Below are positions 5,620-59,312 of a stretch of 64,000 nt of DNA, one piece after another. Origin of the DNA: Macrostomum lignano (taxonomy: Eukaryota); NCBI GenBank assembly GCA_002269645.1, contig NIVC01001789.1, positions 173,573 to 237,572 of the forward strand, in the 5' to 3' direction. Both the position numbers and the translations under genes were made by a program. The notes beneath the pieces were generated by a model. It was not told the origin of the DNA, made no database searches, and saw nothing but the letters and a program-made list of their open reading frames with translations. The stretch's first letter is position 1. Each line of letters begins with the position of its first letter.

Positions 5620-6403
5620 ATGAGTTCGCAAAACCTCCGGGTCCGCAGGCGAGCGTTGCAGAACTTCAAGCTGGGCAAAAGTCGAGCTCCAGTTCCAGTT
5701 GCCCCGGCTGCAGTTGCACCTGCTGATGACTCGGCTGCTAGTGCAGGTCGTACCGGAAGCGAGACCGTTGGCTTGAATGATGAGGTAACTAACTATAAGA
5801 TAGTGGGCTGGCTCAACGGACTAACGTAGCTTAGTTAAAAGGACATCCACATGTAGCTCGTAAAGGTTAATTGTTAAGTCAATAGGTACTTTACTTTGGT
5901 TGGATAGTTTGTTGGTGAACAAGACGAATATTATTGAGAACTTCTGCTCCTATGAACAGAGGACTTGATTGGCATGGCTTGACTCCGTTCTCCGTCGCAA
6001 AAGACTCTGTTAGACAGACTCAATACGGTCTGATGCTGCTAAGAGCGAAGCGTCCTCGTCTGTACACTTCAGTCCTAAGATACCTACGTGTCTCCGTGTT
6101 GTTCTTTTCTATCTTTTCTCCGTGCCAATTGTAGAAAGAGCAGCAACAGCAGCAGCCAAACGATTCGGCAATCTTCTGGCACGAGATGAGTCGAACGTCC
6201 GAAATGCTCACCAGCGCCCTCGAAGACGAGACCAGACGAATGCGGGCTGGCAGTGGAAATGAGGATCGCCAGACTGGTGGCTCGATGGCAACCGTTGTGG
6301 AATTGCGTAATCTTCTGAGCGAAGTGGAAAAACTAAAGCAGATCCAGCGACAGCGACAGCAGCAGCAACAACAACAAAAACCACCACCACCACCACAACA
6401 ACC

Positions 6404-6440
<37 letters not shown>

Positions 6441-13800: not shown

Positions 13801-15570
13801 TCTCCTCTCCTCTCCTCTCCTCTCCTCTTCCCTCCTTTCCTCTCCTCTCCTCTCCTCTCCTCTCCTCGCCTCTCTTCTCCTCTCCTCTCTTCTCCTTCCT
13901 GTCCTCTTCTCTCCTCTCCTCTCCTCTCCTCTCCTCTCCTGTCCTCCTCTCTTCTCCTCACCTCACCTCTCCTTCCTGTCCTCTCCTCTCCTCTCCTCTC
14001 CTCTCCTCTCCTGTCCTCCTCTCTTCTCCTCTCCTCTCCTCTCCTCTCCTCTCCTCTCCTCTCTTCTCCTCTCTTCTCCTCTCCTCTCCTCTCCTCTCCT
14101 CTCCTCTCCTCTCTTCTCCTCTCCTCTCTCCTCTCCTCTCCTCTCCTCTCCTCTCCTCTCCTCTCCTCTCCTCTCCTCTCCTCTCCTCTCCTCTCCTCTC
14201 CTCTCCTCTCCTCTTCTCTTCTCTCTCTCCTCTCCTCTCCTCTCCTCTCCTCTCCTCTCCTCTCCTCTCCTCTCCTCTCCTCTCCTCTCCTCTCCTCTCC
14301 TCTCCTCTCCTCTCCTCTCCTCTCATCTCCTCTCCTCTCCTCTCCTCTCCTCTCCTATTCTCTTCTCTCCCTCATCTCCTCTCCTCTCCTCTCCTCTCCT
14401 CTGCTCTCCTGTCCTCTTCTCTCATTCCTCTCCTCTCCTTCCTCTCCTCTCCTCTCCTCTCCTCTCCTCTCCTCTCCTCTCCTCTACTCTCCTCTCCTCT
14501 CTTCTCCTCTCCTCTCCTCTCCTCTCCTCTCCTCTCCTCTCCTCTCCTCTCCTCTCCTATTTCCTCTCCTCTCCTCTCCTCTCCTCTCATTCCTCTCCTC
14601 TCCTCTCCTCTCCTCTCCTTTCCTCTCCTCTCCTCTCCTCTCCTCTCCTCTCCTCTCCTCTCCTCTCCTCTCCTCCCCTCTCTTCTTCTTTGGATTCCAC
14701 AGGCATTAGGCTTGTTAAAGGACTGAGATGTGCATACCATAGTTAACAGCCACTTTTCCTTACATTTCAAGCTTCTCAGTTCTTGAGATTTCCGTTGCAT
14801 TAGATGTAGAGATCCCCAGCCCCTTAGACAGTAAGTAACCTTTTTCTCGTTTGGTTAAAAATCTGCTTTGCTGATTTCGCATTTATTATTGCTCTGTGTT
14901 GTGCCTTTATAAGTGTCTTTTTTGTTTTAAAGCACATGGTAGTGAAACACGCGTTCAGTACTGTGCAGAAGTTCACAAAATATATTCTTTTAATAAGCAG
15001 ATAGGGCTGCAATATGAGGCTATAAATCTAGGATGATATTATACATAAGATTTATTGTCAAACTTGCATCACAATATAAATTTGGTAAATCTTACATGTA
15101 CGTTTGTTGTGAAGCTGATCTTTTTTACCATTTTCAATTGGTACGTCCATAAGATTTTTGGTCATTGAGCTAGCACTTCTCTGCTCTCCTCTCCTCTCCT
15201 CTCCTCTCCTATTCTCTTCTCTCCCTCATCTCCTCTCCTCTCCTCTCCTCTCCTCTCTTCTCCTCTCCTCTCCTCTCCTCTCCTCTCCTCTCCTCTCCTC
15301 TCCTCTCCTATTTCCTCTCCTCTCCTCTTCTCTCATTCCTCTCTTCTCCTTCCTGTCCTCTCCTCTCCTCTCCTCTCTTCTCCTCTCCTCTCCTCTCCTC
15401 TCCTCTCCTCTCCTCTCCACTCTTCTCCTCTCCTCTCCTCTCCTCTCCTCTCCTCTCCTATTTCCTCTCCTCTCCTCTCCTCTCCTCTCTCCTCTCCTCT
15501 CCTCTCCACTCCTCTCCTCTCTTTTTATCTCCTCTCCTCTCCTCTCTTCTCCTCTCCTCTCCCTTCTCTC
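10885..15570. repeat. (CTCCT)n polypyrimidine arrays with a duplicated ~500-bp unique spacer
   Basis: Three arrays (about 10885-12340, 12840-14682, 15183-15570). The spacers 12341-12840 and 14683-15183 are near identical, giving a period of about 2.34 kb. Confidence 0.95.
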
Positions 15571-19924: not shown

Positions 19925-22900
19925 CTACATCGACAGCTCCGGCCACAGGGCGTGCCAGCGCTCATGGCGTTGGTACGGCTGCCGCAGCAGGGCCTCCCAG
20001 TGGCTGCGTCTCTCGCCTGAGCACTCGCTACCGAGCACCAGGGCACCTGGGTGCGAAACGGCGTTGAGAGAAGGGGAGTGACGCGTTTGGGGCGGTTTTG
20101 GGAGCATTTTTGGAGTGATACGTGGGGATATCTCTAGAGTAATTCACCGAAAGCTTTGTCAGAGTGACAAGTAAAAAAATAAGAGCATCGGCTACTCGTC
20201 ACTCTCACCCATGAAATCATTCTTAGAGCCGAAGTCTTTGTCCCAGACTGTGATCTCTAGCGACTTGTCAAGCAGTTCCTGCGGCGTCACAATGAACTGG
20301 AATTCCTGCAATCATGTTCGGGGGTGTTGGGGTGATGAAAATAAGGAGTGACTTTACGTACAAGTGATTTTAGGAGTGACACTAGGAGCGACATCAGTAG
20401 TGACTGTAGGAGCGACATCAGTAGTGACTGTAGGAGTGACATCAGTAGGCGTGAGTGAAAGCATTGCAGCGACTGTCCGAATTGAAAATCTGAGACAACA
20501 GACGCAGTACAGACACCAACAGACCTCTTCGAATTCCGGATTCAGTGTTCTCCGTTTAAACTCAGTTTTACACTTTTTCGGAGTTCCATCGTCCGGTTTC
20601 AGGTGTCTGGCGAAGAGAAGCGGGTTAAGAGTTGGGAAAACACTCACTATAGTTAAAGCGAAATATTGTTTCTTATAACAAATAAGGCAAAAATGAGGCT
20701 CACAGTTTGACAAAAGGATCGCTGTATCCGTTTGGGTCCATGGCAATCAGATTAACGCACTGGATAATCCTTACGGTGAGCTCGTTCTTGGCCGGGGCGT
20801 AATATAGGCCAATCAGAATCTTTCCCCGATCGTCATCTTCCAGCTTCAACGATCTGTCAAGCTCCTGGGTGAATCCAGCATTGAGTGGTTTGTAGTCATT
20901 TCGGAAAAAAACAAAAAGACCGACACAACTTACAAAATTTTTCGGCTGCAAAAAGATCTGCGAATATTCCTTCTTGCCGGAGTGCAGCAAATGGCTCAGT
21001 GGGTAGAGAATCTCTCCCATCCATTCGAATCCGATTGTGTCCTCGTCCAGCACTGATAGCCTTTAAATTGGGCAGAGTAGTGACGCCTTGCCCTGATTTT
21101 ATGGCTGTGCAACGCCCCAACCCTCGATTCCTGCCTCCATTGACAGCCACCTCACGCCTTGCCCTGATTTTCTGGCTGTGCAGCGCTCTAACCCCTTGAT
21201 TCCTACCCCTATTGTACGCCACCTCACGCCTTGACCTGATTTTCTGGCTGTACAGCGCTCTAACCCCTTGATTACTACCCCTATTGTACGCCACCTCACG
21301 CCTTGCCCTGATTTTATGGCTGTGCAACGCCCCAAACCTCTATTCCTACCCCTATTGTACGCCACCTCACGCCTTGCCCCAATTTTATGGCTGTGCAGCG
21401 CTCTAACCCCTTGATTCTTATTCATATCGACCGCTTCACCACCTATATTTTGGCCCCAATTTTTGGCTGGGCAAGCACCCCAATCTTAAGTACAATCCTA
21501 GATAGTAATTTTTTCTTACTATACGAACGTATTAAGCTACATGTAACTAAAAGTATGAGCTAGAAATGATAGCAATGCAAAACCTGATGTTAACCTTAGC
21601 ATCTTCGCCTCAATCTCGGCTTTAGTAATGCCGCTGTAGCAGAACTCCTCGTCCCACAGCGGATTAAGCGTTCTCTGGCAGGTTCGGGTACGCAGTTTAG
21701 TTCTTTTGCCAGTATCGGGCAGCAGATGGACTTTCACATAAGGATCGGATAGTCCATTGGCGTCATGGGCGCGCAGATTTTCGCCCTTAATGATGCGAAT
21801 GTACAGAGCGGCCTTGCCCGGAATGTACTGCAAGACAAAGTGCACAGTGCCTAGGCCTCTGTCTTCAAAGTACACGCCCGGTGGTAGCGTTGAAATCGGC
21901 TGCTGCTGCTGCTGCTGCGTTGCTGACGGACTGGCGGGTGGTCTCCGCTCGGGTGTGGCGGTTGCTATTGGCAACAATTGAGGTTCGTGGGGGACTGTTA
22001 GTGAGATATATTTTTTACGAATGCACATGCAGTTTCCTTGATGACTCGCTAAGCCGTAGAGGCGAGACATCAAGCAAACTTTCATATTTGGGGAAAGGGA
22101 GCAGGGAATGTCTGCTCGTAGCCACATTGGTGGGATAAAATTATGAATGTAAAGTGGGATAAATTGGAGTGTTCGATAGAATGAGTGTGAGATAGAATGA
22201 GTGTGCGATAGAATGAGTGTGAGATAGAATGAGTGTGGGATAGATTGGAGTGTGCGATAGAATTGGTGTGGGATAGATTGGAGTGTGGGATTGGAGTGTG
22301 GGATAGAATGGAGTGAGGGATAGAATGGAGTGTGGGATAGACTGGTGTGGGATAAATTGAGTGTGGGATTGGAGTGTGGGATAGAATGGAGTGAGGGATA
22401 GAATGGAGTGAGGGATAGAATGGAGTGTGGGATAGAATGGAGTGAGGGATAGAATGAAGTGTGGGATAAACTCCTGCGCTTATAGAGCAAGTGCACTTAA
22501 GTACGATGAATGTACAATAGTTTGGTGTACATTAAAAATAGACACGGGCTAAAGGTAACAATCATTGAGCAAGGTAGAAATGGATCAGCTAAGGCCGAGC
22601 TCCCTGCATCCCTACCTCCATATTTCGCGACTCTCCCAGCAGCAGCGAGTCCGTTACTCTCGCTATTGGCAGCGGAATCTGAAAAAAAAATCAATTAATT
22701 ACTTCTCATCTTTAAAATCCCTCTGCATTGCGCATTGCGCAAACACATTATCAGTGATGACAATCAAGAACACAGCGTTAGCAAAGAAACCGACTTTGAC
22801 CGTGAGCTTGAGTTGCCAAGAGAGCATTCGATCTTCATGCGCCGACTTCTTGACCCGCAAGGACACAAAATTTCACAGGGAGGACGGCGTTTAAATAAGT

Positions 22901-34192: not shown

Positions 34193-35435
<1,243 letters not shown>

Positions 35436-35735
35436 GCAAATGGCCTGGCTAATAATGACTATCAAAAGCAATTTGCTAATTTATTTGACGATGACTTTCA
35501 AAAGCCTTTTGTACGGTTGAGTTCAATTGACTGAGGCGATATTTGCCTCACTTAAAATTTTCAATTCAACAGGGATGGGGGCGCCACACAGTAACCATTG
35601 GCTGCTGGGGATGGAGGAGGGTCGAGCTGCAACGGGATAAAGGGATTCGGAGCTGAATGCCTCAGAGATCTGCGCTGTCTCAGCACGACACGTTGCCTCT
35701 CAGGTAAGTTTATTCTCCCATTTATAATATAAACT

Positions 35736-36360
<625 letters not shown>

Positions 36361-36454
36361 ATATCTATTTGAATCCACTTTAACATTAGATAGCAGAGCA
36401 GCCAATTCAGACCGTTTCAACTCAGCTGCTAGCCACTGAAGTACAAAGGCAACG

Positions 36455-37297
36455 ATGAACTTTCTGTGGGGCCTGCTGGCCGCGGTGCTGATTGCGTTCT
36501 TCAGCGCGCCGTCGCTTGCGCAAGAAGATACAGGTGACACTTTTTATTACCCACATGAATTGTTTGGTACTCGGTTTTAGTTTTTTGTTTTTTGTTTATG
36601 CTTAGGGATGGGGTTAGGGTTATTGCTTTGCTTTCCTTAGTCGCAGTCGCTGTCTGTAGTGCAGCCAAATGTCAACAGCTATGGAACTTTTTCTTTGACA
36701 GATAGCGACGTCGTACAAACGCGTTTGCTAAGAGACTTTGACACGTTGGATAAGCGCGGCTACGCCAGATTCGGGAAGCGCGGCTACGCCAGATTCGGGA
36801 AGCGCGGCTACGCCAGATTCGGGAAGCGCGGCTACGTCAGATTCGGGAAGCGCGGCTACGCCAGATTCGGGAAGCGCGGCTACGCCAGATTCGGGAAGCG
36901 CGGCTACGCCAGATTCGGGAAGCGCGGCTACGCCAGATTCGGGAAGCGCGGCTACGCCAGATTCGGGAAGCGCGGCTACGCCAGATTCGGGAAGCGCGGC
37001 TACGCCAGATTCGGGAAGCGCGGCTACGTCAGATTCGGGAAGCGCGGCTACGCCAGATTCGGGAAGCGCGGCTACGCCAGATTCGGGAAGCGCGGCTACG
37101 CCAGATTCGGGAAGCGCGGCTACGCCAGATTCGGGAAGCGTGGCTACGCCAGATTCGGGAAGCGCGGCTACACCACATTCGGGAAGCGCGGCTACGCCAG
37201 ATTCGGGAAGCGCGGCTACGCCAGATTCGGGAAGCGCGGCTACGCCAGATTCGGAAAACGATCAGCTATTGTTCAGGAAGAGCCTTCTATGTACTAA
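36455..37297 (+). CDS. FMRFamide-like neuropeptide precursor (18x GYARFamide, 2x GYVRFamide, 1x GYTTFamide)
   Basis: Exon 36455-36533 encodes the signal peptide MNFLWGLLAAVLIAFFSAPSLA-QEDT (donor ACAG|GTGAC, phase 1). Exon 36702-37297 (acceptor TTTGACAG) encodes an acidic spacer, KR, 21 x GYxxF-G-KR (36758-37261) and SAIVQEEPSMY-stop. Gly-Lys-Arg is the canonical amidation/convertase signal. Confidence 0.95.
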
Positions 37298-37524: not shown

Positions 37525-39220
37525 CTGCACCTGAGCATCTGAGAGCAGGATGTCTGCAATCCCACCTGAGTATCTGAGTGCAGGATGTCTGCAATCCCAC
37601 CTGAGTATCTGAGTGCAGGATGTCTGCAATCCCACCTGAGTATCAGAGTGCAGGATGTCTGCAATCCCACCTGAGTCTCCGAGAGCAGGATGTCTGCAAT
37701 CACACCTGAGTCTCCGAGAGCAGGAGAGCAGGATGTCTGCAATCACACCTGAGTCTCCGAGAGCAGGATGTCTGCAATCACACCTGAGTATCTGAGTGCG
37801 AGATATCTGCAATCACACCTGAGTATCTGAGTGCGAGATGTCTGCAATCACACCTGAGTCTCCAAGAGCAGGATGTCTGCAATCACACCTGAGTCTCCAA
37901 GAGCAGGATGTCTGCAATCACACCTGAGTATCAGAGTGCAGGATGTCTGCAATCACACCTGAGTATCTGAGTGCAGGATGTCTGCAATCACACCTGAGCA
38001 TCTTAGTGCAGGATGTCTGCAATCACACCTGAGTATCTGAGTGCGAGATGTCTGCAATCACACCTGAGTCTCCAAGAGCAGGATGTCTGCAATCACACCT
38101 GAGTCTCCAAGAGCAGGATGTCTGCAATCACACCTGAGTATCAGAGTGCAGGATGTCTGCAATCACACCTGAGTATCTGAGTGCGAGATGTCTGCAATCA
38201 CACCTGAGTATCAGAGTGCAGGATGTCTGCAATCACACCTGAGCATCTGAGTGCGAGATGTCTGCAATCACACCTGAGCATCTTAGTGCAGGATGTCTGC
38301 AATCACACCTGAGCATCTTAGTGCAGGATGTCTGCAATCAATCACACCTGAGTATCAGAGTGCAGGATGTCTGCAACCACACCTGAGTATCAGAGTGCAG
38401 GATGTCTGCAATCAATCACACCTGAGTATCTGAGTGCAGGATGTCTGCAATCACACCTGAGCATCTTAGTGCAGGATGTCTGCAATAACACCTAAGCATC
38501 TGAGTGCAGGATGTCTGCAATCACACCTGAGCATCTGAGTGCAGGATGTCTGCAATAACACCTAAGCATCTGAGTGCAGGATGTCTGCAATCACACCTGA
38601 GCATCTGAGTGCAGGATGTCTGCAATCACACCTGAGTATCTGAGTGCAGGATGTCTGCAATCACACCTGAGCATCTGAGTGCGAGATGTCTGCAATCACA
38701 CCTGAGTATCAGAGTGCAGGATGTCTGCAATCACACCTGAGTATCAGAGTGCAGGATGTCTGCAATCACACCTGAGCATCTGAGTGCAGGATGTCTGCAA
38801 TCACACCTGAGTATCAGAGTGCAGGATGTCTGCAATCACACCTGAGCATCTGAGTGCAGGATGTCTGCAATCAATCACACCTGAGTATCAGAGTGCAGGA
38901 TGTCTGCAACCACACCTGAGTATCAGAGTGCAGGATGTCTGCAATCACACCTGAACATCTGAGTGCAGGATGTCTGCAATCACACCTGAGTATCAGAGTG
39001 CAGGATGTCTGCAATCAATCACACCTGAGTATCTGAGTGCAGGATGTCTGCAATCAATCACACCTGAGTATCAGAGTGCAGGATGTCTGCAACCACACCT
39101 GAGTATCAGAGTGCAGGATGTCTGCAATCAATCACACCTGAGTATCTGAGTGCAGGATGTCTGCAATCACACCTGAGCATCTTAGTGCAGGATGTCTGCA
39201 ATAACACCTAAGCATCTGAG
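37525..39220. repeat. 35-bp satellite (GAGTGCAGGATGTCTGCAATCACACCTGAGCATCT)n, left part
   Basis: Period 35. The array resumes at 43023 after the LINE insertion. Confidence 0.96.
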
Positions 39221-42200
39221 CAGATCAACACCCAGCACTGCGTGGCGGCGTCGGTCAACCTGATGCGCACGGCAGAGCAACAGCTTCCGGGCCTGGTCTT
39301 CGTACAGGAGCCCTGGATGACTAAAGGTAAGCCAAATAATGTGCCATCTGGCTACCACTGTTTTTGCATGGCGGGCTCTCAGCCTCGCCCAAGATCTCTG
39401 GTCTTTGCTGCAAAAGCTTTTGAGGCATGGATGAGACCTGATCTCTCGACTGGGGACATCTGTGTTGTTCAAATCAATAACCTCATTCCCAATAAACCTG
39501 TGCTGGTATTGATAGCTTCTGCCTATTTCCCGGGCGATGCCCCAGTTGTCTGCGACGCGTTAGTCAACCTTACTGACTATGCTGCGTCCCATCGGTTCGA
39601 GCTGCTCATTTCAGGGGATGTGAACGCACACCACCTGCATTGGGGCAGCAAGAACATCAATAGCAGAGGCGAGGAGCTGCTGGCCTATGTCAGCAGCACT
39701 AACCTCAACTTCTGTAACGTGGGCAATGCACCAACGTTCAATAATGGGCGGTGGGCCGAAGTCATCGACACCACCATCGCCTCACCCGGACTGCTTTCCG
39801 CAGTTACGGGCTGGCGAGTGTGGGACGAGGACTCGCTCTCGGACCACCGCTTTATCCGCTTTTGCATTGGGCCGACCAAGCAAAAGCCTAAGGTCACTTG
39901 GAGTCGGAACGTCAGGAACACCGATTGGGCCGCCTTTGGCTCGAAGCTGAGCCGCGGCCTTCGGGATCTTGACCCCCCCAGTGACCTCTCTGACTGCCAG
40001 GTGGTGGACGATCTCGCCTCCTCCCTGGGCGGGGCGATCACCACTGCCTTTGAAGCAGCCTGCCCCCTAAAGGCCTATAAAGGCAAGAAATCTGCTCCCT
40101 GGTGGAACCCAGAGCTCGGGGCCCTTCGACGCCGAGCCAGGACCCTCCAAAGGCGAGCGCTCAAAACCAAAGACCCATCTGACAGAGAGGCCTATACCCG
40201 TGCGATCCACGAGTTTAAGGGCCAAGTCAGAAGGGCCAAGACGGCCAAGTGGCGCCAATATTGCGAAGGGCTTGAGGGCTCTCGCCCCGTAGCCCGCGTG
40301 GTTAAGGCACTCACTAATGACCGTTTTTCTAAACTCTCTGTCGTGAAGAGACCTGACGGCTCGGTCACAGAGAGTTCGGAAGAGACTCTAGAGTTCATGC
40401 TCAGCAGTTTTTTCCCTAAATCTCCGACTCAGCAGGGCCCGCCCGACCACACAGTGGGAGGGCAAGGCCTAGCAAAGTCTATGATCACCAAAGACCGCAT
40501 TATTAGAGCGGCAAGGTCCTTTAACCCGTTCAAGGCGCCTGGGCCCGACGGCATCTACCCAGCGTTCTTGCACGAGGCGGTGAAAAACCACCGCTTCCTG
40601 GACCTGCTCTGTCGTCTCCTTCGAGCTTGTGTGGAGCTGGGCTATGTACCAGTTGCATGGAGAGAGGCCCGGGTGGTCTTTATCCCCAAGCCTGGAAAGA
40701 GCGACTACCAATCGGTGAAGGCCTTCAGGCCTATCAGCCTCACTTCTTTCTGCCTCAAGCTCCTCGAGAGACTGGTGCTTTGGCGCCTACTTTCGGTCGA
40801 TCTGAAGCGCTTCCCACTCTCGCAGAACCAGCACGCCTTCCGCGCGGGCAGGTCAACCGAGAGTGCTCTCCATGTCATTGTTGACTTCCTGGAGAGGGCC
40901 GTTCTTGGCAGCGGCTTTGCCCTCTCGCTTTTCCTGGACATTGAGGGGGCCTTCGACAACGTCATCTTCGAGGCCTTTTGCAGAGCCCTGGAATCCAGGG
41001 CCACGCACCCTCACCTTGTCCGGTGGATCATGTTCATGATCCGAAACCGCACTGTTGTGGCCCATCTGAGTGGCAGCTCTCTTTCGGTGCCTGTCCTGAA
41101 AGGGGGCCCCCAGGGCGGCGTTCTCACCCCCGTTCTCTGGAACATGGTCATGGATGAGTTGCTTTGCAGTGATCTCCACGACCCCATTCTCAAGGTGGGC
41201 TATGCCGATGATGTGACCGCGATATGCGCGGGCCCCTCGGTTGATACCATCAGAGACCTTCTGCAGGGCTTTCTGGGACGAGCGGAGCGTTGGGCAGACC
41301 AATGTGGCCTTAGACTCTCAGAGTCGAAAACCACAGCAGTCATGTTTACCAACAAACTGCTCTGGACCATTAAGCCCCTCACCCTCTATGGAAAGAATAT
41401 TTCCATGGAGAAGCAGGTCCGCTGCCTGGGCCTCACTCTGGACCACAGGCTTAACTGGACTCCGCACATTCAAACTAAAGCCAAAAAAGCCCTGGCTGTA
41501 CTGGCTCAGATCAGGCGCGCCGTGGGCACCACCTGGGGGCTCACCCCCAGGAAGCTCTGGTGGATTTACACTGCCATCATCCGCCCCTCGATCAGTTACG
41601 CCAGCCTCGTGTGGGCTAGCGGCCTGAGCGTCAAGAGCAACCTCGACGCTCTCTACAAAATCCAGGGCAGAGCCTGCCGCATGACTATGGGCGCTCCACC
41701 CTCTACTCCTTTTGAAGGCATGAATGCCTTCCTCTGTGCCCCTCCTTTGGATATTTATATCAAAGGAGAGGCGGCGAAGAGCACCCGGCGTCTTCTGGAT
41801 GCTGGGGTGGCCTTCAAGAAAGTGCGGGCCTTTAAGAAGCGGTCGCTTATCCCGCACTCTGACCTCTGCCTCAAGGCTCTCGAGGAGTGTGGCGGGCTCA
41901 ACATCCTCACGGACTCGATCCCAGCCACCCTTCTCCTGAGCCAAAGGTATAAGGTCACCATTCAGCCTCGACACGAGGCGAGTGACAGCTGGAGCGACTC
42001 TGAAGTCCACTGTTACACTGACGGCTCTATGAGGCATGGTCTTTCAGGCTTCGGAGCTTGCGTCTTCTTCAAGGGAGAAGTGGTGTGGAGCTACTCCCAG
42101 CACACTGGGCTCAACTCCAGTGTTTTTCAGAGCGAGGTGCTTGCCATCAGCTCCTGCGCGGCAGAGCTGCGCCGAAGGCAGCTTAGCGGCCGGAAATTTA

Positions 42201-43022
42201 TTTTTCACTCTGACAGCCAAGCAGCCCTTCGGGCCCTCTGCCGCAGCACCGCCAGCTCCAGGTCCGTCCTGGACTGCAACACCCAGCTCAACGGGCTTGC
42301 GCTAGGCAACCAGGTGGAGCTCAGATGGATCCCGGGCCACGCCGGCTTCCCGGCAACGAGCGCGCTGACCTGCTGGCCAAGGCTGGCTCCGCCGGCGCGC
42401 TATTGGGGCCGGGCCCGGGTGCCCCCATCCCCGCCTCGGTGATCAATTCCCGCGTTAAGCGCTGGGCTGACTCCGAGCATCTCCGCAGGTGGCACGACAC
42501 CCGGAATTGTAGGCAATCCCGTGCTGCCGTCCCCTGCCCCTCTCCTCTCCTGCGTAGAGCCCTCCTCAGGCTCAACCGCAGAGACCTCAGAGCAGTTAGC
42601 ATGGCCCTCTCCGGGTATGGCTGCTTCTCTCGCCACCGCTTCCTTCAGGGCCAAGTACCCGAGGAGCGGTGCCCCTTCTGCCGCTCAGGCAGTGAAAACG
42701 CCGAGCATTTTATCTGCCACTGCCAGGTTTTCACCAGGGCCAGGCTTACTCACCTCGGGCCAAACCCGGTTCTCTCCGACGTTTGCAGGCCCGAGAGCAT
42801 CCCGCTGCTCGCCCGGTACCTCAGGGACACCGGACGAGCTGATTTCTTCCCCACCGTCGGTGAGGAGGACCGCGCTGCAGGCGAGACCGACGGGTCCCCC
42901 TGAGCGACACCACTTCAACGGAAGTCGTTGGTCGCCAGGGGCTAGCGGAATGGGCGGTCTCCTCCGCCTCCTCGCTGCATCCGCCGGACGCCCCCTGCAG
43001 CTAAGTCAAAGTAAGTCAAGTC
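39221..43022 (+). mobile_element. 5'-truncated non-LTR retrotransposon, I-group (Loa/R1/Tad1-like): APE endonuclease, RT, RNase H, CCHC
   Basis: The frame opens QINTQHC...VQEPW...GDVNAHH...SDH (APE). RT: KAPGPDG, FRPISL, QHAFR, FLDIEGAFD, PQGGVL, YADD. RNase H: YTDGS, SEVLAI, SDSQAAL, WIPGHAG then GNERADLLAK after a 1-bp frameshift at about 42350. C-terminal CPFC...H...C, stop at 42903, (AAGTC)n tail, TSD AAGCATCTGAG at 39210-39220 and 43023-43033. Confidence 0.95.
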
Positions 43023-43225
43023 AAGCATCTGAGTGCAGGATGTCTGCAATCACACCTGAGCATCAGAGTGCAGGATGTCTGCAATCACACCTGAGCATCT
43101 GAGTGCAGGATGTCTGCAATCAATCACACCTGAGTATGAGTGCAGAATGTCTGCAATCACACCTTAGTATGAGTGCAGGATGTCTGCAATCACACCTGAG
43201 TATCCGAGAGCAGGATGTCTGTCAC
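43023..43225. repeat. 35-bp satellite, right part
   Basis: Same unit as 37525-39220. Confidence 0.95.
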
Positions 43226-44470: not shown

Positions 44471-45214
44471 CAGTCTTCATGCCAGAAATTCTTCCCATTA
44501 ACGTGAGAAATTCGCTTCCTATCTGCTACATAAGCATATTTTGTACTGCGTGATCAATCCACCGATATGTAGCGTAACTAACTTTTTGGATATTTTCTTT
44601 AATTTTCAATTTCTTCAATTTCAAGCAAGCTAAAAATGGCATGACTTGGCTTTTCACATTTTTCGGTAGAAGAAGAAGAAGACGAAGAAAGCAGAAGTAT
44701 TTTCAATTTCTGCTTATCCGAGAGACAGCCAACGCGGAAACACTTCCCTGTCTTGGTCTTGTGCGGGAAATTGCGAGCCGTAGAGGGTAGACCCGGTAGG
44801 TCCCCTCTAAGCGGATATTGAGTCCGCAACAGGAAGTCCTATTTGTTTCCTTTTGGCTGATTCCCATCTTCAGCAGTTAAATTGTCACCAGCCGGATATA
44901 TTGATATATTAGGTCACGTGACTTCTATAAAAATAGTGAATCAAATCAACAGCTAGAAATTCAGGCATCTTGATTCGGAAATTGCCTTGAGAAGCAACTT
45001 TGTTGGAGTTTTATATTTAACGGCACTGATAGGGGCGCCTTTTCGGACTCAAAATCTAATTATCGATAGGTCCGGCATTGGATTTTACATTTCACTTAAT
45101 CAGGAACTGAGTGAGCGAGTTGCAGATGAGGCAGGTCAGAGGGAAATTAGAGATTAATTGAAGAGAAAGAAGGGGCGAAGTGGGTTACGGGAAAGGGGAC
45201 ACGCTGGATCAGAG

Positions 45215-48200
45215 AGAGAGGGAGATAGATCGGGGAGAGAGGGAGATAGATCGTGGAGTGAGGGAGATAGATCGGGGAGAGAGGGAGATAGATCGGGGAG
45301 AGAGGGAGATAGATCGGGGAGAGAGGGAGATAGATCGTGGAGTGAGGGAGATAGATCGGGGAGAGAGGGAGATAGATCGGGGAGAGAGGGAGATAGATCG
45401 GGGAGAGAGGGAGATAGATCGGGGAGAGGGAGATAGATCGTGGAGTGAGGGAGATAGATCGGGGAGAGAGAGAGATAGATCGGGGAGAGAGGGAGATAGA
45501 TCGTGGAGTGAGGGAGATAGATCGTGGAGTGAGGGAGATAGATCGGGGAGAGAGGGAGATAGACCGGGGAGAGAGGGAGATAGATCGTGGAGTGAGGGAG
45601 ATAGATCGGGGAGAGAGGGAGATAGATCGGGGAGAGAGGGAGATAGATCGTGGAGTGAGGGAGATAGATCGGGGAGAGAGGGAGATAGATCGGGGAGAGA
45701 GGGAGATAGATCGGGGAGAGAGGGAGATAGATCGTGGAGTGAGGGAGATAGATCGTGGAGTGAGGGAGATAGATCGGGGAGAGAGGGAGATAGATCAGAG
45801 AGAGAGGGAGATAGATCGGGGAGAGAGGGAGATAGATCGTAGAGTGAGGGAGATAGATCGGGGAGAGAGGGAGATAGATCGGGGAGAGAGGGAGATAGAT
45901 CGGGGAGAGAGGGAGATAGATCGGGGAGAGAGGGAGATAGATCAGGGAAAGAGGGAGATAGATCAGGGAAAGAGGGAGATAGATCGTGGAGTGAGGGAGA
46001 TAGATCGGGGAGAGAGGGAGATAGATCGTGGAGTGAGGGAGATAGATCGGGGAGAGAGGGAGATAGATCGGGGAGAGAGGGAGATAGATCGGGGAGAGAG
46101 GGAGATAGATCGTGGAGTGAGGGAGATAGATCGTGGAGTGAGGGAGATAGATCGGGGAGAGAGGGAGATAGATCGGGGAGAGAGGGAGATAGATCGGGGA
46201 GAGAGGGAGATAGATCAGGGAAAGAGGGAGATAGATCGTGGAGTGAGGGAGATAGATCGGGGAGAGAGGGAGATAGATCGTGGAGTGAGGGAGATAGATC
46301 GGGGAGAGAGGGAGATAGATCAGGGAAAGAGGGAGATAGATCGTGGAGTGAGGGAGATAGATCGGGGAGAGAGGGAGATAGATCAGGGAAAGAGGGAGAT
46401 AGATCGTGGAGTGAGGGAGATAGATCGGGGAGAGAGGGAGATAGATCGGGGAGAGAGGGAGATAGATCAGGGAAAGAGGGAGATAGATCGTGGAGTGAGG
46501 GAGATAGATCGGGGAGAGAGGGAGATAGATCGGGGAGTGAGGGAGATAGATCGGGGAGAGAGGGAGATAGATCAGGGAAAGAGGGAGATAGATCGTGGAG
46601 TGAGGGAGATAGATCGTGGAGTGAGGGAGATAGATCGGGGAGAGAGGGAGATAGATCGGGGAGAGAGGGAGATAGATCGTGGAGTGAGGGAGATAGATCG
46701 GGAGAGAGAGGAGATAGATCGTGGAGTGAGGGAGATAGATCGGGGAGAGAGGGAGATAGATCAGGGAAAGAGGGAGATAGATCGTGGAGTGAGGGAGATA
46801 GATCGGGGAGAGAGGGAGATAGATCGTGGAGTGAGGGAGATAGATCGGGGAGAGAGGGAGATAGATCGGGGAAAGAGGGAGATAGATCGTGGAGTGAGGG
46901 AGATAGATCGGGGAGAGAGGGAGATAGATCGTGGAGTGAGGGAGATAGATCGGGGAGAGAGGGAGATAGATCAGGGAAAGAGGGAGATAGATCGTGGAGT
47001 GAGGGAGATAGATCGTGGAGTGAGGGAGATAGATCGGGGAGAGAGGGAGATAGATCAGGGAAAGAGGGAGATAGATCGTGGAGTGAGGGAGATAGATCGG
47101 GGAGAGAGGGAGATAGATCGTGGAGTGAGGGAGATAGATCGTGGAGTGAGGGAGATAGACCGGGGAGAGAGGGAGATAGATCAGGGAAAGAGGGAGATAG
47201 ATCGTGGAGTGAGGGAGATAGATCGGGGAGAGAGGGAGATAGATCGTGGAGTGAGGGAGATAGATCGGGGAGAGAGGGAGATAGATCAGGGAAAGAGGGA
47301 GATAGATCGTGGAGTGAGGGAGATAGATCGGGGAGAGAGGGAGATAGATCGTGGAGTGAGGGAGATAGATCGGGGAGAGAGGGAGATAGATCAGGGAAAG
47401 AGGGAGATAGATCGTGGAGTGAGGGAGATAGATCGGGGAGAGAGAGAGATAGATCGTGGAGTGAGGGAGATAGATCGGGGAGAGAGGGAGATAGATCGTG
47501 GAGTGAGGGAGATAGATCGGGGAGAGAGGGAGATAGATCGTGGAGTGAGGGAGATAGATCGGGGAGTGAGGGAGATAGATCGGGAGAGAGGGAGATAGAT
47601 CAGGGAAAGAGGGAGATAGATCGTGGAGTGAGGGAGATAGATCGGGAGAGAGGGAGATAGATCGTGGAGTGAGGGAGATAGATCGGGGAGAGAGGGAGAT
47701 AGATCAGGGAAAGAGGGGATAGATCGTGGAGTGAGGGAGATAGATCGGGGAGAGAGGGAGATAGATCGTGGAGTGAGGGAGATAGATCGGGGAGAGAGGG
47801 AGATAGATCAGGGAAAGAGGGAGATAGATCGTGGAGTGAGGGAGATAGATCGGGGAGAGAGGGAGATAGATCAGGGAAAGAGGGAGATAGATCGTGGAGT
47901 GAGGGAGATAGATCGTGGAGTGAGGGAGATAGATCGGGGAGAGAGGGAGATAGATCAGAGAGAGAGGGAGATAGATCGGGGAGAGAGGGAGATAGATCGT
48001 AGGGTGAGGGAGATAGATCGGGGAGAGAGGGAGATAGATCGGGGAGAGAGGGAGATAGATCGGGGAGAGAGGGAGATAGATCGGGGAGAGAGGGAGATAG
48101 ATCAGGGAAAGAGGGAGATAGATCAGGGAAAGAGGGAGATAGATCGTGGAGTGAGGGAGATAGATCGGGGAGAGAGGGAGATTGATCAGGGAAAGAGGGA

Positions 48201-50258
48201 GATAGATCGTGGAGTGAGGGAGATAGATCGGGGAGAGAGGGAGATAGATCAGGGAAAGAGGGAGATAGATCGGGGAGAGAGAGAGATAGATCGTGGAGTG
48301 AGGGAGATAGATCGGGGAGAGAGGGAGATAGATCGTGGAGTGAGGGAGATAGATCGGGGAGAGAGGGAGATAGATCGTGGAGTGAGGGAGATAGATCGTG
48401 GAGTGAGGGAGATAGATCGGGGAGAGAGGGAGATAGATCAGGGAAAGAGGGAGATAGATCGTGGAGTGAGGGAGATAGATCGGGGAGAGAGGGAGATAGA
48501 TCGGGGAGAGAGGGAGATAGATCGTGGAGTGAGGGAGATAGATCGGGGAGAGATAGATCGGAGATAGATCAGGGAAAGAGGGAGATAGATCGTGGAGTGA
48601 GGGAGATAGATCGGGGAGAGAGGGAGATAGATCGTGGAGTGAGGGAGATAGATCGGGGAGAGAGGGAGATAGATCAGGGAAAGAGGGAGATAGATCGTGG
48701 AGTGAGGGAGATAGATCGGGGAGAGAGGGAGATAGATCAGGGAAAGAGGGAGATAGATCGTGGAGTGAGGGAGATAGATCGGGGAGAGAGGGAGATAGAT
48801 CGTGGAGTGAGGGAGATAGATCGGGGAGAGAGGGAGATAGATCAGGGAAAGAGGGAGATAGATCGTGGAGTGAGGGAGATAGATCGGGGAGAGAGGGAGA
48901 TAGATCAGGGAAAGAGGGAGATAGATCGTGGAGTGAGGGAGATAGATCGGGGAGAGAGAGAGATAGATCGTGGAGTGAGGGAGATAGATCGGGGAGAGAG
49001 GGAGATAGATCGTGGAGTGAGGGAGATAGATCGGGGAGAGAGGGAGATAGATCGTGGAGTGAGGGAGATAGATCGGGGAGTGAGGGAGATAGATCGGGGA
49101 GAGAGGGAGATAGATCAGGGAAAGAGGGAGATAGATCGTGGAGTGAGGGAGATAGATCGGGGAGAGAGGGAGATAGATCGTGGAGTGAGGGAGATAGATC
49201 GGGGAGAGAGGGAGATAGATCAGGGAAAGAGGGGGATAGATCGTGGAGTGAGGGAGATAGATCGGGGAGAGAGGGAGATAGATCGTGGAGTGAGGGAGAT
49301 AGATCGGGGAGAGAGGGAGATAGATCAGGGAGAGAGAGAGATAGATCGTGGAGTGAGGGAGATAGATCGGGGAGAGAGGGAGATAGATCGTGGAGTGAGG
49401 GAGATAGATCGGGGAGAGAGGGAGATAGATCGTGGAGTGAGGGAGATAGATCGGGGAGTGAGGGAGATAGATCGGGGAGAGAGGGAGATAGATCAGGGAA
49501 AGAGGGAGATAGATCGTGGAGAGAGGGAGATAGATCGGGGAGAGAGGGAGATAGATCGGGGAGAGAGGGAGATAGATCAGGGAAAGAGGGAGATAGATCA
49601 GGGAAAGAGGGAGATAGATCGTGGAGTGAGGGAGATAGATCGGGGAGAGAGGGAGATTGATCAGGGAAAGAGGGAGATAGATCGTGGAGTGAGGGAGATA
49701 GATCGGGGAGAGAGGGAGATAGATCAGGGAAAGAGGGAGATAGATCGTGGAGTGAGGGAGATAGATCGGGGAGAGAGAGAGAGATAGATCGTGGAGTGAG
49801 GGAGATAGATCGGGGAGAGAGGGAGATAGATCGTGGAGTGAGGGAGATAGATCGGGGAGAGAGGGAGATAGATCGTGGAGTGAGGGAGATAGATCGTGGA
49901 GTGAGGGAGATAGATCGGGGAGAGAGGGAGATAGATCAGGGAAAGAGGGAGATAGATCGTGGAGTGAGGGAGATAGATCGGGGAGAGAGGGAGATAGATC
50001 GTGGAGTGAGGGAGATAGATCGGGGAGAGAGGGAGATAGATCAGGGAAAGAGGGAGATAGATCGTGGAGTGAGGGAGATAGATCGGGGAGAGAGGGAGAT
50101 AGATCGGGGAGTGAGGGAGATAGATCAGGGAGAGAGGGAGATAGATCAGGGAAAGAGGGAGATAGATCGGGGAGTGAGGGAGATAGATCGGGGAGAGAGG
50201 GAGATAGATCAGGGAAAGAGGGAGATAGATCGGGGAGAGAGGGAGATAGATCGGGGGG
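45215..50258. repeat. 21-bp minisatellite GGGAGATAGATC+(GGGGAGAGA/GTGGAGTGA/AGGGAAAGA), about 5 kb
   Basis: About 240 units with three interspersed variants. The EREIDRG ORFs are repeat translations. Confidence 0.97.
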
Positions 50259-57146: not shown

Positions 57147-59312
57147 CTACTTGATAGAAGCTCCGGAACCCGACTTTACAGCTTTCTGCTCTTCCGATTT
57201 CTGATGCAGACAATAGCAAAGCGCTCTCAGATGAGGCAACTTATCACCTAGACAGGCGGCTTGTTGACGATAGGCGTTCACCCGACTAACACTATTTATA
57301 TCCATGCTCAGTCGGTGACTAGCAATGTCCTCTTGCACCGTCACCTCGTAGTGGCCATGATTAGGCAGCGTCTCAATTGTGAGCCGATATAGTCGATAGC
57401 CGGCCGACATCGTGTCCGAGAAGTCCGGATTTCTACCGTCCGCGTCTGCGCTTGCCTGTAACAAATAGTGTCGGGTGTTGATTTTTGCCTGCAGTCGAGA
57501 GTAGAGCATCACTTCCTGCCCTAAATTGATTCTATCTCTTCCCTCTGCTATACGCGTAATACGATCCTGATTTCTTCCTTAAAAATTTCACCTACCTTGA
57601 AGGAGAGAATCTTAGTCGATGGTGCGTATCCATCCACGGCAAGCAGCTTGGAGAAGGTCAACTCGGCGCATTGATCTCGATGCTTCTCAGTTTGCGCATT
57701 GAACTGCGCTACAACGTAATAACCAATCGTTTTGACGTTAGTGCCCAACGGACTGAGCGACTGCCAGGCAAGGCAAGCGCACCAATGCGCTTCGATGCCT
57801 ATTTGAGCGCAATTGCGCTTCTCTGAAATTGGCGTAAAAAGGCTGACGCCGGCCTCGCGTTTACTAGTGGTCTTTGTGTTCTCCTGATGCTGCGGCGGCG
57901 GCTGGGGCGTAAAAAATTCGGCAGCATGCCGCATCGTTGCGTGCAAATCAAGCGGTGTAATCAGGCGATTTTGATTTTTTATTAGCTGTTTGGTCTCTAT
58001 AGGATGAGCGTCTTTCAGACGCTTGGGTAAGGCTATGCCTAGAAAGGGCAGGCGCTCTTCATATTTTCCTTGAAGCGTTGATCGCGTCTTGGCATAACGG
58101 TGGCCATGGTCGGACATAAGTATCAGTATGGAATCATCCAGGTGTTTAGATTCTTTCAGATAGCGCAGATAAGCCAATAGATCGGCGTCCATCGGGCTTA
58201 GGTAATAGTTGTCTTCGTGGCTCAACTCGGAGTGAAACACAAAGGTAAACTTCTTGCGGTTCCGATACACGTCCAGGAAGTCCTTCTGCCAATCGATTTT
58301 CACTTGATGAAGCGGCTTAGAGCCCAGGCAGCCGTACTTCCGGTGCGGATAGAGTTCATCAAGCTTCAGATAGAATGGTCGCATATAGTGATCAGTAGGC
58401 TGCTTCTTAAAGCCCAGCAGTCGTACTGGAAAGTGCCGTATTTAGAACCGTCCTCGCCAAACTGGGTTGTGTAGTTCTTAGCCGCCAGTCGCGCCAGATC
58501 CACGGATAATCGTCGACGGGTTTCGAATTGTTAAAACCGCGACGCGATTCGTACAGTTCGCTCTCCAGATGGCCAGTCAGCATTGGCAGCAGATTTGGCG
58601 TCGTGCCGTCACCTAGGATGTTGAATTTTTCGAACACGACGCCGCCAATGTCGTTAATAAAGTAGCCGTACGACTTTGGCAGATAGCGCTTCCAGGCTTC
58701 TCGCGATACTGAATCCAGGCCGAAAAGAATTATGCTTAACGGCTTTTGGTTCTGTTTGATGTACGGCGCCTCCTTAGATAGCTTTGGCGCTATACCCGCG
58801 TGCAACAGTTGGTACTGCTTCGATCTTTGCTCACTGGCGCAGTTAGCAACAAAGAAGTCGTTGATTAGTTGCCTATTCGTCGATATATCATCGACAGCTT
58901 CACCGTAGTAGACGGAGAAATCGTCGTCACGCAATACGGGCACCATGGCGCACTTGACGTCAGGATATGCGCTGCGTGTAGCGTCCGTAATCCGAAAAGT
59001 GCCGCCCTCGGACGTGACCCAGTTAGGCTCGGCAGCAGTGCAGTTCAGTGTGTACAACGGTCTCGCCGATATTAACTGCTGTTGAAGGGGCGGCAGAATG
59101 CAGAGACTTTCAGTATCCTCCTTGGCCCCAGAGAGCACAACGTCCTGTTTGATTTGCAACGGATGAAAGCGCTTCTTGATGAGATTCGGCTGCCGGAGTA
59201 GCTCCAGAAACACGTACACTATCGGCACGCATATAATTAGCGTCCACATTAGCCGGTAGTGTGATCTTCCAAGCCGAGCGTAGTACATAATGCGACGCAT
59301 TATTCGAACCAT
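57147..59312 (-). CDS. DUF229 family protein (alkaline-phosphatase/sulfatase-like fold) with an N-terminal membrane anchor; two 1-bp frameshifts as assembled
   Basis: Motifs GLDSVSR, FNILGDGTTPNLLPMLTG, SELSHED, MSDHGHRY, EERLPF, RLITPLDLHAT, C.QIGIEAHWCAC, SR.N.Y...C...LCYC. Intron 57456-57595 (AAG|GTAGGT...TACAG). The frame is restored by adding one base at about 58478 and one at about 58423. Confidence 0.85.

What the first reader, a model, noticed from the sequence alone, without database searches (positions are those of the whole stretch)
36455..37297. 21-copy GYARFamide precursor with GYVRF and non-RF GYTTF variants
A clean signal peptide precedes 21 spacerless GYxxF-GKR units. GYARFamide resembles the flatworm FaRPs GYIRFamide/YIRFamide but has Ala/Val at position 3; I cannot confirm whether it is already described. 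The 24-bp units are almost identical even at synonymous sites. The two Val copies are exactly 8 units apart (units 4 and 12), implying block duplication like the neighbouring minisatellites, so peptide dosage may be copy-number variable. Unit 18 (GYTTF) loses the RF-amide signature.
Basis: partly seen in the sequence, partly recalled or inferred. Interest (0 to 1): 0.75.

Follow-up and report, generated by a model that had tools for sequence, protein, structure and literature searches.

The report
Flatworm 21-copy GYARFamide neuropeptide gene
This is a real two-exon gene of the flatworm Macrostomum lignano that encodes a secreted precursor with 21 back-to-back copies of a short RFamide neuropeptide (mostly GYARFamide); it is an ordinary kind of gene with an unusually high, nearly identical copy array, and public databases already flag it automatically as FMRFamide-related.

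Summary
Window 36455-37297 (+) holds a 79-nt signal-peptide exon, a 168-nt GT..AG intron, and a second exon. That exon carries 21 spacerless 24-bp units encoding KR-GYxxF-G: 18 GYARF, 2 GYVRF (units 4 and 12) and 1 GYTTF (unit 18).

The window is Macrostomum lignano. UniProt A0A1I8JRL5 ("FMRFamide-related neuropeptides", M. lignano) has an identical N-terminus across the proposed splice junction. UniProt A0A1I8IXZ7 is a chimeric model of this same locus fused to the downstream retrotransposon, and it reproduces the GYTTF-GYARFx3-SAI end of the array.

The best explanation is a multi-copy FMRFamide-like peptide (FLP) prohormone. It would be processed at KR sites and amidated to GYARF-NH2, acting like the flatworm peptides GYIRFamide and YIRFamide.

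- **Unusual features:** the copy number (planarian spp-11 has 3 YIRFamide copies, the schistosome gene 1), Ala/Val at position 3, and 98.8% nucleotide identity between units. The region is 43% tandem repeat.
- **Weaker claims:** the 8-unit block duplication is plausible but unproven. Copy-number variability has only indirect support.
- **Prior naming:** no searchable paper names GYARFamide. The key flatworm peptide lists (McVeigh 2009, Koziol 2016) could not be read.

Verdict: a new member of a known kind, of moderate-to-low interest.

The parts
36455..36533 (+). Exon 1 (79 nt). It runs from the start ATG through the signal peptide MNFLWGLLAAVLIAFFSAPSLA and QEDT, plus the first base of the Asp codon. 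The donor is CAG|GTGACA.
   Evidence: The 26 N-terminal residues are identical in P0001 and P0006.
36534..36701 (+). Intron of 168 nt, GT..AG, with a pyrimidine-rich 3' end (ctttttctttgacag). It contains two in-frame stop codons, so retaining it would truncate the protein.
   Evidence: The junction EDT|D|SDVV is reproduced in UniProt A0A1I8JRL5.
36702..36751 (+). Start of exon 2: the acidic propeptide spacer (D)SDVVQTRLLRDFDTLD that precedes the first KR site.
   Evidence: It is identical in P0001.
36752..37255 (+). Coding minisatellite of 21 x 24 bp. Each unit is AAG CGC GGC TAC GCC AGA TTC GGG, which encodes KR-GYARF-G. It has no indels and 6 substitutions in 504 nt.
36824..36847 (+). Unit 4, GYVRF (GCC>GTC).
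37016..37039 (+). Unit 12, GYVRF. It carries the same substitution as unit 4, 192 bp away.
37160..37183 (+). Unit 18, GYTTF (GCC>ACC and AGA>ACA). It has lost the Arg of the RFamide motif.
   Evidence: The same unit in the same position relative to the 3' end appears in P0006. The one-step intermediate GYTRF appears in P0001.
37256..37297 (+). Last KR site (AAA CGA), the C-terminal peptide SAIVQEEPSMY and the TAA stop.
   Evidence: SAIVQEEPS is shared with P0001.
35736..36363 (.). Context: a (GATA)157 microsatellite that ends 91 bp upstream of the ATG. The core promoter must therefore lie in the roughly 90-bp unique stretch, which contains a CCAAT motif, or the mRNA starts or is trans-spliced there.
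   Evidence: The inference about the promoter was not tested.

Best explanation
Window 36455-37297 (+) is a two-exon gene of the free-living flatworm Macrostomum lignano. It encodes a 224-aa FMRFamide-like peptide (FLP) prohormone.

Proposed mechanism:

1. The signal peptide directs the protein into the secretory pathway, with cleavage most likely after SLA22.
2. A prohormone convertase cuts at each of the 22 Lys-Arg sites, and carboxypeptidase trims the basic residues.
3. The exposed C-terminal Gly is converted to an amide.
4. One precursor therefore yields 18 GYARF-NH2, 2 GYVRF-NH2 and 1 GYTTF-NH2, plus an N-terminal acidic propeptide and the C-terminal peptide SAIVQEEPSMY.
5. By analogy with GYIRFamide and YIRFamide, the RFamide products would be released from neurons and act on a rhodopsin-type FLP GPCR. 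In muscle this pathway goes through PKC to raise voltage-gated Ca2+ entry and cause contraction.

The array is a coding minisatellite. Its near-identity at silent sites shows recent expansion or ongoing homogenisation by slippage or unequal exchange, in a genome region that is 43% tandem repeat.

Shown here: the gene structure, the processing motifs, the species, and agreement with independent gene models. Inferred: expression, processing, amidation, the receptor and the physiological role. The confidence of 0.85 is for 'a genuine FLP-type neuropeptide precursor gene'. The specific GPCR/PKC/Ca2+ myoexcitatory role taken alone is about 0.5.
For: - **Anatomy:**. This covers the signal peptide, the phase-1 GT..AG intron, 21 KR-GYxxF-G units with no indels, and the finding that this is the only tandem array in the window with a stop-free G[KR][KR] frame.
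- **Species and gene:** P0001 is UniProt A0A1I8JRL5, M. lignano, 'FMRFamide-related neuropeptides' (E = 2e-50). Its N-terminus is identical across the splice junction and it has the same C-terminal SAIVQEEPS.
- **Same locus in another assembly:** P0006 is A0A1I8IXZ7, with the same signal peptide and array end, fused to the same downstream retrotransposon at 98-100% identity.
- **Substitution pattern:** 4 silent and 3 replacement events, against 5.7 silent and 18.3 replacement sites. This leans toward purifying selection (binomial P = 0.06).
- **Family context:** YIRFamide precursors are known in planarians (Smed-spp-11, 3 copies, peptide detected by MS) and schistosomes.
- **Signalling context:** flatworm FLPs contract muscle through a PKC-dependent pathway (GPCR implicated) that enhances Ca2+ influx through voltage-operated channels, and a GPCR for GYIRFamide is known in Girardia (PMC2919380).
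- **Processing enzyme:** M. lignano has a pc2 convertase homologue with an RNAi phenotype (PMC4490696).
Against: - No transcript, peptide or expression data could be reached. No exact-protein contigs are on record, and no further relatives turned up in three protein searches.
- Pfam gives no hit, including to its short FARP model.
- Similarity to spp-11 is limited to the peptide and cleavage motif, so orthology is unproven.
- Position 3 is Ala/Val rather than the bulky Ile/Met of known active flatworm FLPs, so potency at FLP receptors is uncertain.
- The copy number comes from a single assembly of a hard-to-assemble repeat.
Confidence: 0.85

Rival explanations
1. The gene is real, but the array as written is partly an assembly product. 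The 21 units, the Val units exactly 8 apart and the near-perfect identity would then reflect mis-estimation or consensus polishing of a tandem repeat. The true allele(s) would differ in unit number and variant content.
For: The two older M. lignano gene models of this gene are riddled with frame shifts inside the array, which shows how badly this repeat assembles. P0001 decodes to about 14 units with a different set of variants. The window is 43% tandem repeat.
Against: The array has zero indels and keeps an intact 224-aa frame. The GYTTF + 3 x GYARF + SAI end is reproduced independently in P0006. Rare variants (V, TT, silent changes) survived, which argues against wholesale homogenisation by polishing.
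Confidence: 0.15
2. The locus is a non-functional or decaying duplicate. M. lignano carries many recent gene duplicates. On this reading the locus would be a silent paralogue whose repeat is expanding neutrally like its neighbours, and the expressed FLP gene lies elsewhere.
For: The array behaves like the surrounding minisatellites. One unit has already lost the RFamide motif. A (GATA)n array sits 91 bp from the ATG, and a retrotransposon lies 2 kb downstream. P0001 has a diverged 5' leader, which suggests that a second copy exists.
Against: The ORF, signal peptide, splice sites and all 22 KR and 21 Gly processing sites are intact. There are no indels in 504 bp of repeat. There is an excess of silent changes. 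The coding N-terminus is 100% identical between copies while the leader differs.
Confidence: 0.08
3. The peptides act mainly on a peptide-gated DEG/ENaC channel (FaNaC-like) rather than on a GPCR.
For: RFamides gate or modulate DEG/ENaC channels in molluscs, annelids and cnidarians. M. lignano has DEG/ENaC genes in the sister branch of the FaNaCs (PMC9234716). GYARFamide was not among the peptides tested there.
Against: Those M. lignano channels gave no current with FMRFa, YMRFa or two other M. lignano peptides. Flatworm FLP action on muscle is PKC-dependent and points to a GPCR, and a GYIRFamide GPCR is known.
Confidence: 0.07

Closest known systems
Flatworm YIRFamide/GYIRFamide peptides and their precursors (Smed-spp-11, Sma-npp-23 / Sja-spp-11)
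   Same: They come from the same phylum. They share the (G)Y-x-R-F-amide core, KR cleavage sites and a Gly amide donor, on a small secreted precursor. The expected myoexcitatory signalling is also the same.
   Different: Position 3 is Ala or Val here, not Ile. There are 21 spacerless copies, against 3 copies with spacers in Smed-spp-11 and 1 in the schistosome gene. No sequence similarity is detectable outside the peptide and cleavage motif.
Spiralian FMRFamide-type precursors, for example Lineus longissimus XP_064635473.1 (P0071) and the M. lignano FMRFa/YMRFa propeptide Mlig001796.g3
   Same: These are multi-copy Y/F-x-RF-G-K/R precursors. The Lineus protein carries about 20 YMRFamide copies plus YIRF-type and GYMRF units. 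M. lignano has such a gene as well.
   Different: In those precursors the copies are separated by acidic spacers and differ from one another. The Lineus precursor has a Cys-containing N-terminal region, while this gene has none. This gene is a separate locus that encodes a different peptide.
High-copy RFamide precursors of cnidarians and molluscs (Antho-RFamide, Aplysia FMRFamide). This comparison is from my own knowledge and was not tested here.
   Same: They use the same strategy of amplifying peptide yield per mRNA with tens of tandem copies.
   Different: They belong to different phyla and encode different peptides. Their copies are normally diverged at silent sites and usually separated by spacers.
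UniProt A0A1I8JRL5 and A0A1I8IXZ7 (M. lignano, automatic annotation)
   Same: They represent the same gene or locus, or a very close paralogue in the case of A0A1I8JRL5. The N-terminus, the C-terminus and the repeat units are identical to the window.
   Different: Both models are broken. A0A1I8JRL5 is frame-shifted inside the array, holds about 14 units and includes GYTRF units. A0A1I8IXZ7 is mis-spliced and fused to the downstream retrotransposon. Neither shows the intact 21-copy precursor.

Membership tests
FMRFamide-like peptide (FLP/FaRP) multi-copy prohormone | N-terminal signal peptide | tested here: met
   MNFLWGLLAAVLIAFFSAPSLA|Q has a hydrophobic core with Kyte-Doolittle values up to 2.8, with Ser at -3 and Ala at -1. 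No dedicated predictor such as SignalP was available.
FMRFamide-like peptide (FLP/FaRP) multi-copy prohormone | Repeated peptide units that end in Arg-Phe followed by Gly, the amide donor | tested here: met
   20 of 21 units end in RF-G. Unit 18 ends in TF-G.
FMRFamide-like peptide (FLP/FaRP) multi-copy prohormone | Basic cleavage sites flanking every unit | tested here: met
   Lys-Arg is present at all 22 boundaries.
FMRFamide-like peptide (FLP/FaRP) multi-copy prohormone | Match to the curated family model (Pfam FARP, PF01581) | tested here: not met
   hmmscan of the 224-aa precursor found no Pfam family at E <= 0.01. The model is a very short motif model, so this is weak negative evidence. 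UniProt's automatic name is nevertheless 'FMRFamide-related neuropeptides'.
FMRFamide-like peptide (FLP/FaRP) multi-copy prohormone | Neuronal expression and detection of the amidated peptide | not testable with these tools
   No transcript or peptidome data could be reached.
Flatworm YIRFamide precursor family (spp-11 / npp-23), orthology | Y-[I/M]-R-F-amide core peptide | tested here: inconclusive
   The Y-x-R-F core is present, but x is Ala (18 units) or Val (2 units), not Ile or Met.
Flatworm YIRFamide precursor family (spp-11 / npp-23), orthology | Sequence homology outside the peptide and cleavage motif | tested here: not met
   BLASTP against Smed-spp-11 aligns only the repeated Y-x-RFGKR motifs (34-40% identity). 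These precursors are too short and fast-evolving for this to exclude orthology.
Flatworm YIRFamide precursor family (spp-11 / npp-23), orthology | Activation of the GYIRFamide-type GPCR, or myoexcitation | not testable with these tools
   This needs receptor or muscle assays.

The most novel reading that the evidence does not exclude
The FLP array is a hypervariable coding minisatellite. Unit number and the mix of variants (GYARF, GYVRF, GYTRF, GYTTF) would differ between homeologous copies, lines and individuals of M. lignano. Neuropeptide dose and peptide cocktail would then be a standing, rapidly mutating quantitative trait. GYARFamide, with a small residue at position 3, would be a lineage-specific ligand that co-evolved with its receptor.
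Probability: 0.3. Interest if true: 0.5.

Novelty: new member of a known kind. Interest (0 to 1): 0.3.

Why it matters
- **Gene model:** it supplies the correct, intact model for an M. lignano FLP prohormone that public databases hold only as two broken models.
- **Structure-activity question:** the peptide has Ala or Val where active flatworm FLPs have Ile or Met. That makes a natural structure-activity test for flatworm FLP receptors, which are studied as anthelmintic targets.
- **Repeat dynamics:** the array's near-identity at silent sites, in a genome region that is 43% tandem repeat, makes it a convenient case for asking whether repeat instability tunes neuropeptide dosage.

None of this changes what is known about how RFamide precursors work.

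Tried and rejected
- **Exact-protein look-ups** for encoding contigs. The exon-2 ORF and P0001 were not on record.
- **Protein search with the non-repeat N-terminus alone** found no candidates in the word index.
- **Profile search with the three M. lignano sequences** added no further paralogues.
- **Full HMMER scan of 1.84 billion representatives.** It gave 582 hits, but almost all are unrelated repeat proteins or other GKR-repeat prohormones. Only P0001 and P0006 are true relatives, and only Lineus P0071 shares a Y-x-RF array among the top 150.
- **Exact 36-mer scan of metagenome contigs** gave 0 hits.
- **Pfam** gave no family for the precursor.
- **Literature.** 'YARFamide' matched 0 papers. 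'GYARF' matched only Hungarian surnames. YARFG, YVRFamide and ARFGKRG gave nothing relevant. McVeigh et al. 2009 (PMC2749192) is not held, and Koziol et al. 2016 has no PMC id. A prior npp/flp name for this gene therefore cannot be excluded.
- **Bacterial promoter/terminator scan** is irrelevant for this eukaryotic locus and found nothing.
- **A decayed repeat unit upstream?** I considered whether the propeptide just upstream of the array (LRDFDTLD) is a decayed unit. By my own count from the sequence, only 10 of 24 bases match in register, so I dropped the idea.
- **Other frames or the minus strand?** I considered a function for these. They are open only because the period is a multiple of 3, and they have no start or signal context.

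Full report
**Observation.** The finding is accurate to the base. Tandem Repeats Finder reports a period-24 array at 36752-37254 with 21.0 copies, 97% matches and no indels. Cutting the array into units gives 18 x KR-GYARF-G, two KR-GYVRF-G (units 4 and 12, both GCC>GTC) and one KR-GYTTF-G (unit 18, two substitutions). There are silent changes in unit 17 (CGC>CGT), unit 21 (GGG>GGA) and the terminal KR (AAA CGA). Sixteen of the 21 units are identical at all 24 bases. The 18-nt core occurs 21 times in the window, only here, against 0.03 expected by chance.

The ATG at 36455 opens a 79-nt exon that encodes MNFLWGLLAAVLIAFFSAPSLA|QEDT. This has a strongly hydrophobic core and small residues at -3 and -1. 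Reading straight on runs into stop codons. Removing the GT..AG intron 36534-36701 joins the exon in phase to the repeat frame and gives a 224-aa protein that ends at TAA 37295-37297. The open frame across the repeat is not evidence by itself, because all three + frames are open. The evidence lies in the signal-peptide exon, the phase-correct splice and the processing motifs. Of 68 TRF rows for the window, this is the only array (among those with 4 or more copies) with a stop-free frame that contains G[KR][KR].

**Source organism and independent support.** A search of 5.8 billion proteins returned UniProt A0A1I8JRL5 from Macrostomum lignano, automatically named "FMRFamide-related neuropeptides" (P0001, E = 2e-50). 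Its sequence reads MNFLWGLLAAVLIAFFSAPSLAQEDTDSDVVQTRLLRDFDTLDKRGYARFG... and ends ...GYARFGKRSAIVQEEPS. It therefore carries exactly the proposed 36533^36702 junction and the same C-terminus.

The middle of P0001 is the repeat read in the wrong frames. SAATSDSG is the +1 frame of a GYVRF unit, and ARLHQIRE is the +2 frame of a GYTRF unit. These frame shifts look like assembly or annotation errors in the underlying genome sequence.

The exhaustive HMMER scan of 1.84 billion representatives added A0A1I8IXZ7 (P0006). It has the same signal peptide and the same array end (GYTTF, three GYARF, SAI), fused to a reverse transcriptase/RNase H protein. That protein matches window 39224-42504 at 98-100% identity. 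P0006 is therefore a chimeric model of this same locus in another assembly, and it independently confirms the GYTTF unit. The window is M. lignano (Platyhelminthes, Macrostomorpha).

**What it is and how it most likely works.** The anatomy is that of a classical multi-copy amidated-neuropeptide prohormone: a signal peptide, an acidic propeptide, then peptide units each flanked by Lys-Arg and ending in Gly. The inferred pathway is as follows:

1. The signal peptide is cleaved.
2. A convertase cuts at the 22 KR sites.
3. The basic residues are trimmed.
4. The C-terminal Gly is converted to an amide.

This would yield 18 GYARF-NH2, 2 GYVRF-NH2 and 1 GYTTF-NH2 per molecule. M. lignano has a pc2 convertase homologue whose knock-down has severe effects on hatchlings (PMC4490696).

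The products resemble the flatworm peptides GYIRFamide and YIRFamide. In schistosome muscle, YIRFamide causes contraction by enhancing Ca2+ influx through voltage-operated channels via a PKC-dependent pathway, and a GPCR for GYIRFamide is known from Girardia tigrina (PMC2919380). I therefore propose neuronal release and GPCR-mediated, mainly myoexcitatory or neuromodulatory action.

This step is inference. No expression, peptide or receptor data could be reached. A peptide-gated channel target is a minor rival. The M. lignano DEG/ENaC relatives of FaNaC did not respond to FMRFa or YMRFa, but GYARFa was not tested (PMC9234716).

**The array as a coding minisatellite.** 43% of the window is tandem repeat, in about 40 arrays. 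The GYARF array is flanked by (GTCT)313 and (GATA)157 upstream, the latter ending 91 bp before the ATG, and by a 35-bp minisatellite downstream. Near-identity of the units at silent sites (6 differences in 504 nt) means recent expansion or continuing homogenisation by slippage or unequal exchange.

Counting distinct events gives three replacements (A>V, A>T, R>T) and four silent changes. The sites available are 18.3 replacement and 5.7 silent. This excess of silent change suggests purifying selection but is not significant (P = 0.06). All replacements at the variable position 3 (A, V, T) fall where known flatworm FLPs also vary (I or M).

The two Val units share a non-CpG transition and are best explained by copying. 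But the spacing of 8 units does not identify a single 8-unit duplication.

For copy-number variability there is only indirect evidence. P0001 decodes to about 14 units, with GYTRF at several positions and adjacent GYVRF units. That pattern differs from the window, and its 5' leader is diverged while the coding N-terminus is identical. This fits a paralogous or homeologous copy, but frame-shift errors in that model limit what can be concluded.

**Comparison with what is known.**

- **Same phylum.** Smed-spp-11 encodes three YIRFamide copies separated by spacers, and the schistosome gene encodes one (Collins et al. 2010 supplement). BLASTP between spp-11 and this precursor aligns only the Y-x-RFGKR motifs. 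It works like that family, but orthology is untested.
- **Separate FLP gene in M. lignano.** The species also has a distinct FMRFa/YMRFa propeptide, Mlig001796.g3.
- **Best non-Macrostomum match with a Y-x-RF array.** This is the nemertean Lineus longissimus FMRFamide-type precursor, with about 20 YMRFamide copies separated by acidic spacers.
- **Pfam.** The short FARP model did not hit.
- **Features that set this gene apart.** These are Ala/Val at position 3, 21 spacerless copies and near-identical codons.

**Novelty and score.** The gene is already in UniProt with an automatic FMRFamide-related name, but only as two broken models. The peptide name GYARFamide/YARFamide occurs in none of the 8.3 million searchable full texts. 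The two papers most likely to list M. lignano neuropeptide precursors, McVeigh 2009 and Koziol 2016, could not be read, so a prior npp name cannot be excluded.

I file it as a new member of a known kind. Interest is 0.3: a tidy, correct gene model and an outlier in copy number for flatworm FLPs, but no new principle. The most novel reading still open is a hypervariable coding minisatellite that tunes neuropeptide dose and cocktail. I give it about 0.3 probability.

Noticed in passing
window 39242-42903 (+), flanked by 37528-39220 and 43024-43221: A non-LTR retrotransposon (endonuclease + RT + RNase H; 1066-aa ORF) is inserted into a 35-bp minisatellite, whose units continue on both sides. The RNase H region changes frame near 42331-42349 (the ORF continues as 42325-42903), so this copy carries a frameshift. 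UniProt A0A1I8IXZ7 wrongly fuses this element to the neuropeptide gene.
   Followed up: partly
window 1-64000: 43% of the window is tandem repeat, in about 40 arrays with periods from 3 to 105. Examples are a 21-bp array of 240 copies at 45207-50256, (TCTCC)n at 10888-14686 and (GTCT)313 at 34194-35436. Many of them produce long spurious ORFs in several frames.
   Followed up: partly
P0001 (UniProt A0A1I8JRL5), not in the window: This model contains GYTRF units, the one-step intermediate between GYARF and the window's GYTTF, and a diverged 5' leader next to a 100% identical coding N-terminus. This suggests a second (homeologous or allelic) copy of the gene with about 14 units.
   Followed up: partly
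window 57548-59312 (-): Two adjacent ORFs together cover a DUF229 (sulfatase-like) protein (Pfam E = 3e-67 and 2e-22). It is probably one gene split by an intron or a frameshift.
   Followed up: no
window 61917-63286 (-): Several ORF fragments include a calcineurin-like metallophosphatase match (Pfam Metallophos, E = 5e-11). These are probably exons of a PPP-family Ser/Thr phosphatase.
   Followed up: no
window 20354-22496 (-): ORFs here include a C2-domain match (Pfam C2, E = 3e-14). They look like exons of a C2-domain protein, possibly synaptotagmin/rabphilin-like and neuronal. No link to the neuropeptide gene was tested.
   Followed up: no
window 6186-10775 (+): There are three long ORFs with Gln-rich or Arg/Ser-rich low-complexity segments and no convincing Pfam family. 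Their coding status is unknown.
   Followed up: no
P0081, P0147, P0002, P0003 and P0126 (database hits, not in the window): Other unnamed prohormone-like proteins surfaced in the searches. One has five spacerless GFVRI-GKR copies (P0081). One mixes [G/A]YV[K/R]I-GKR units with FMRF/FLRF units (P0147). Several combine LRW-GKR with PSRF-GKR units. Their organisms were not identified.
   Followed up: no
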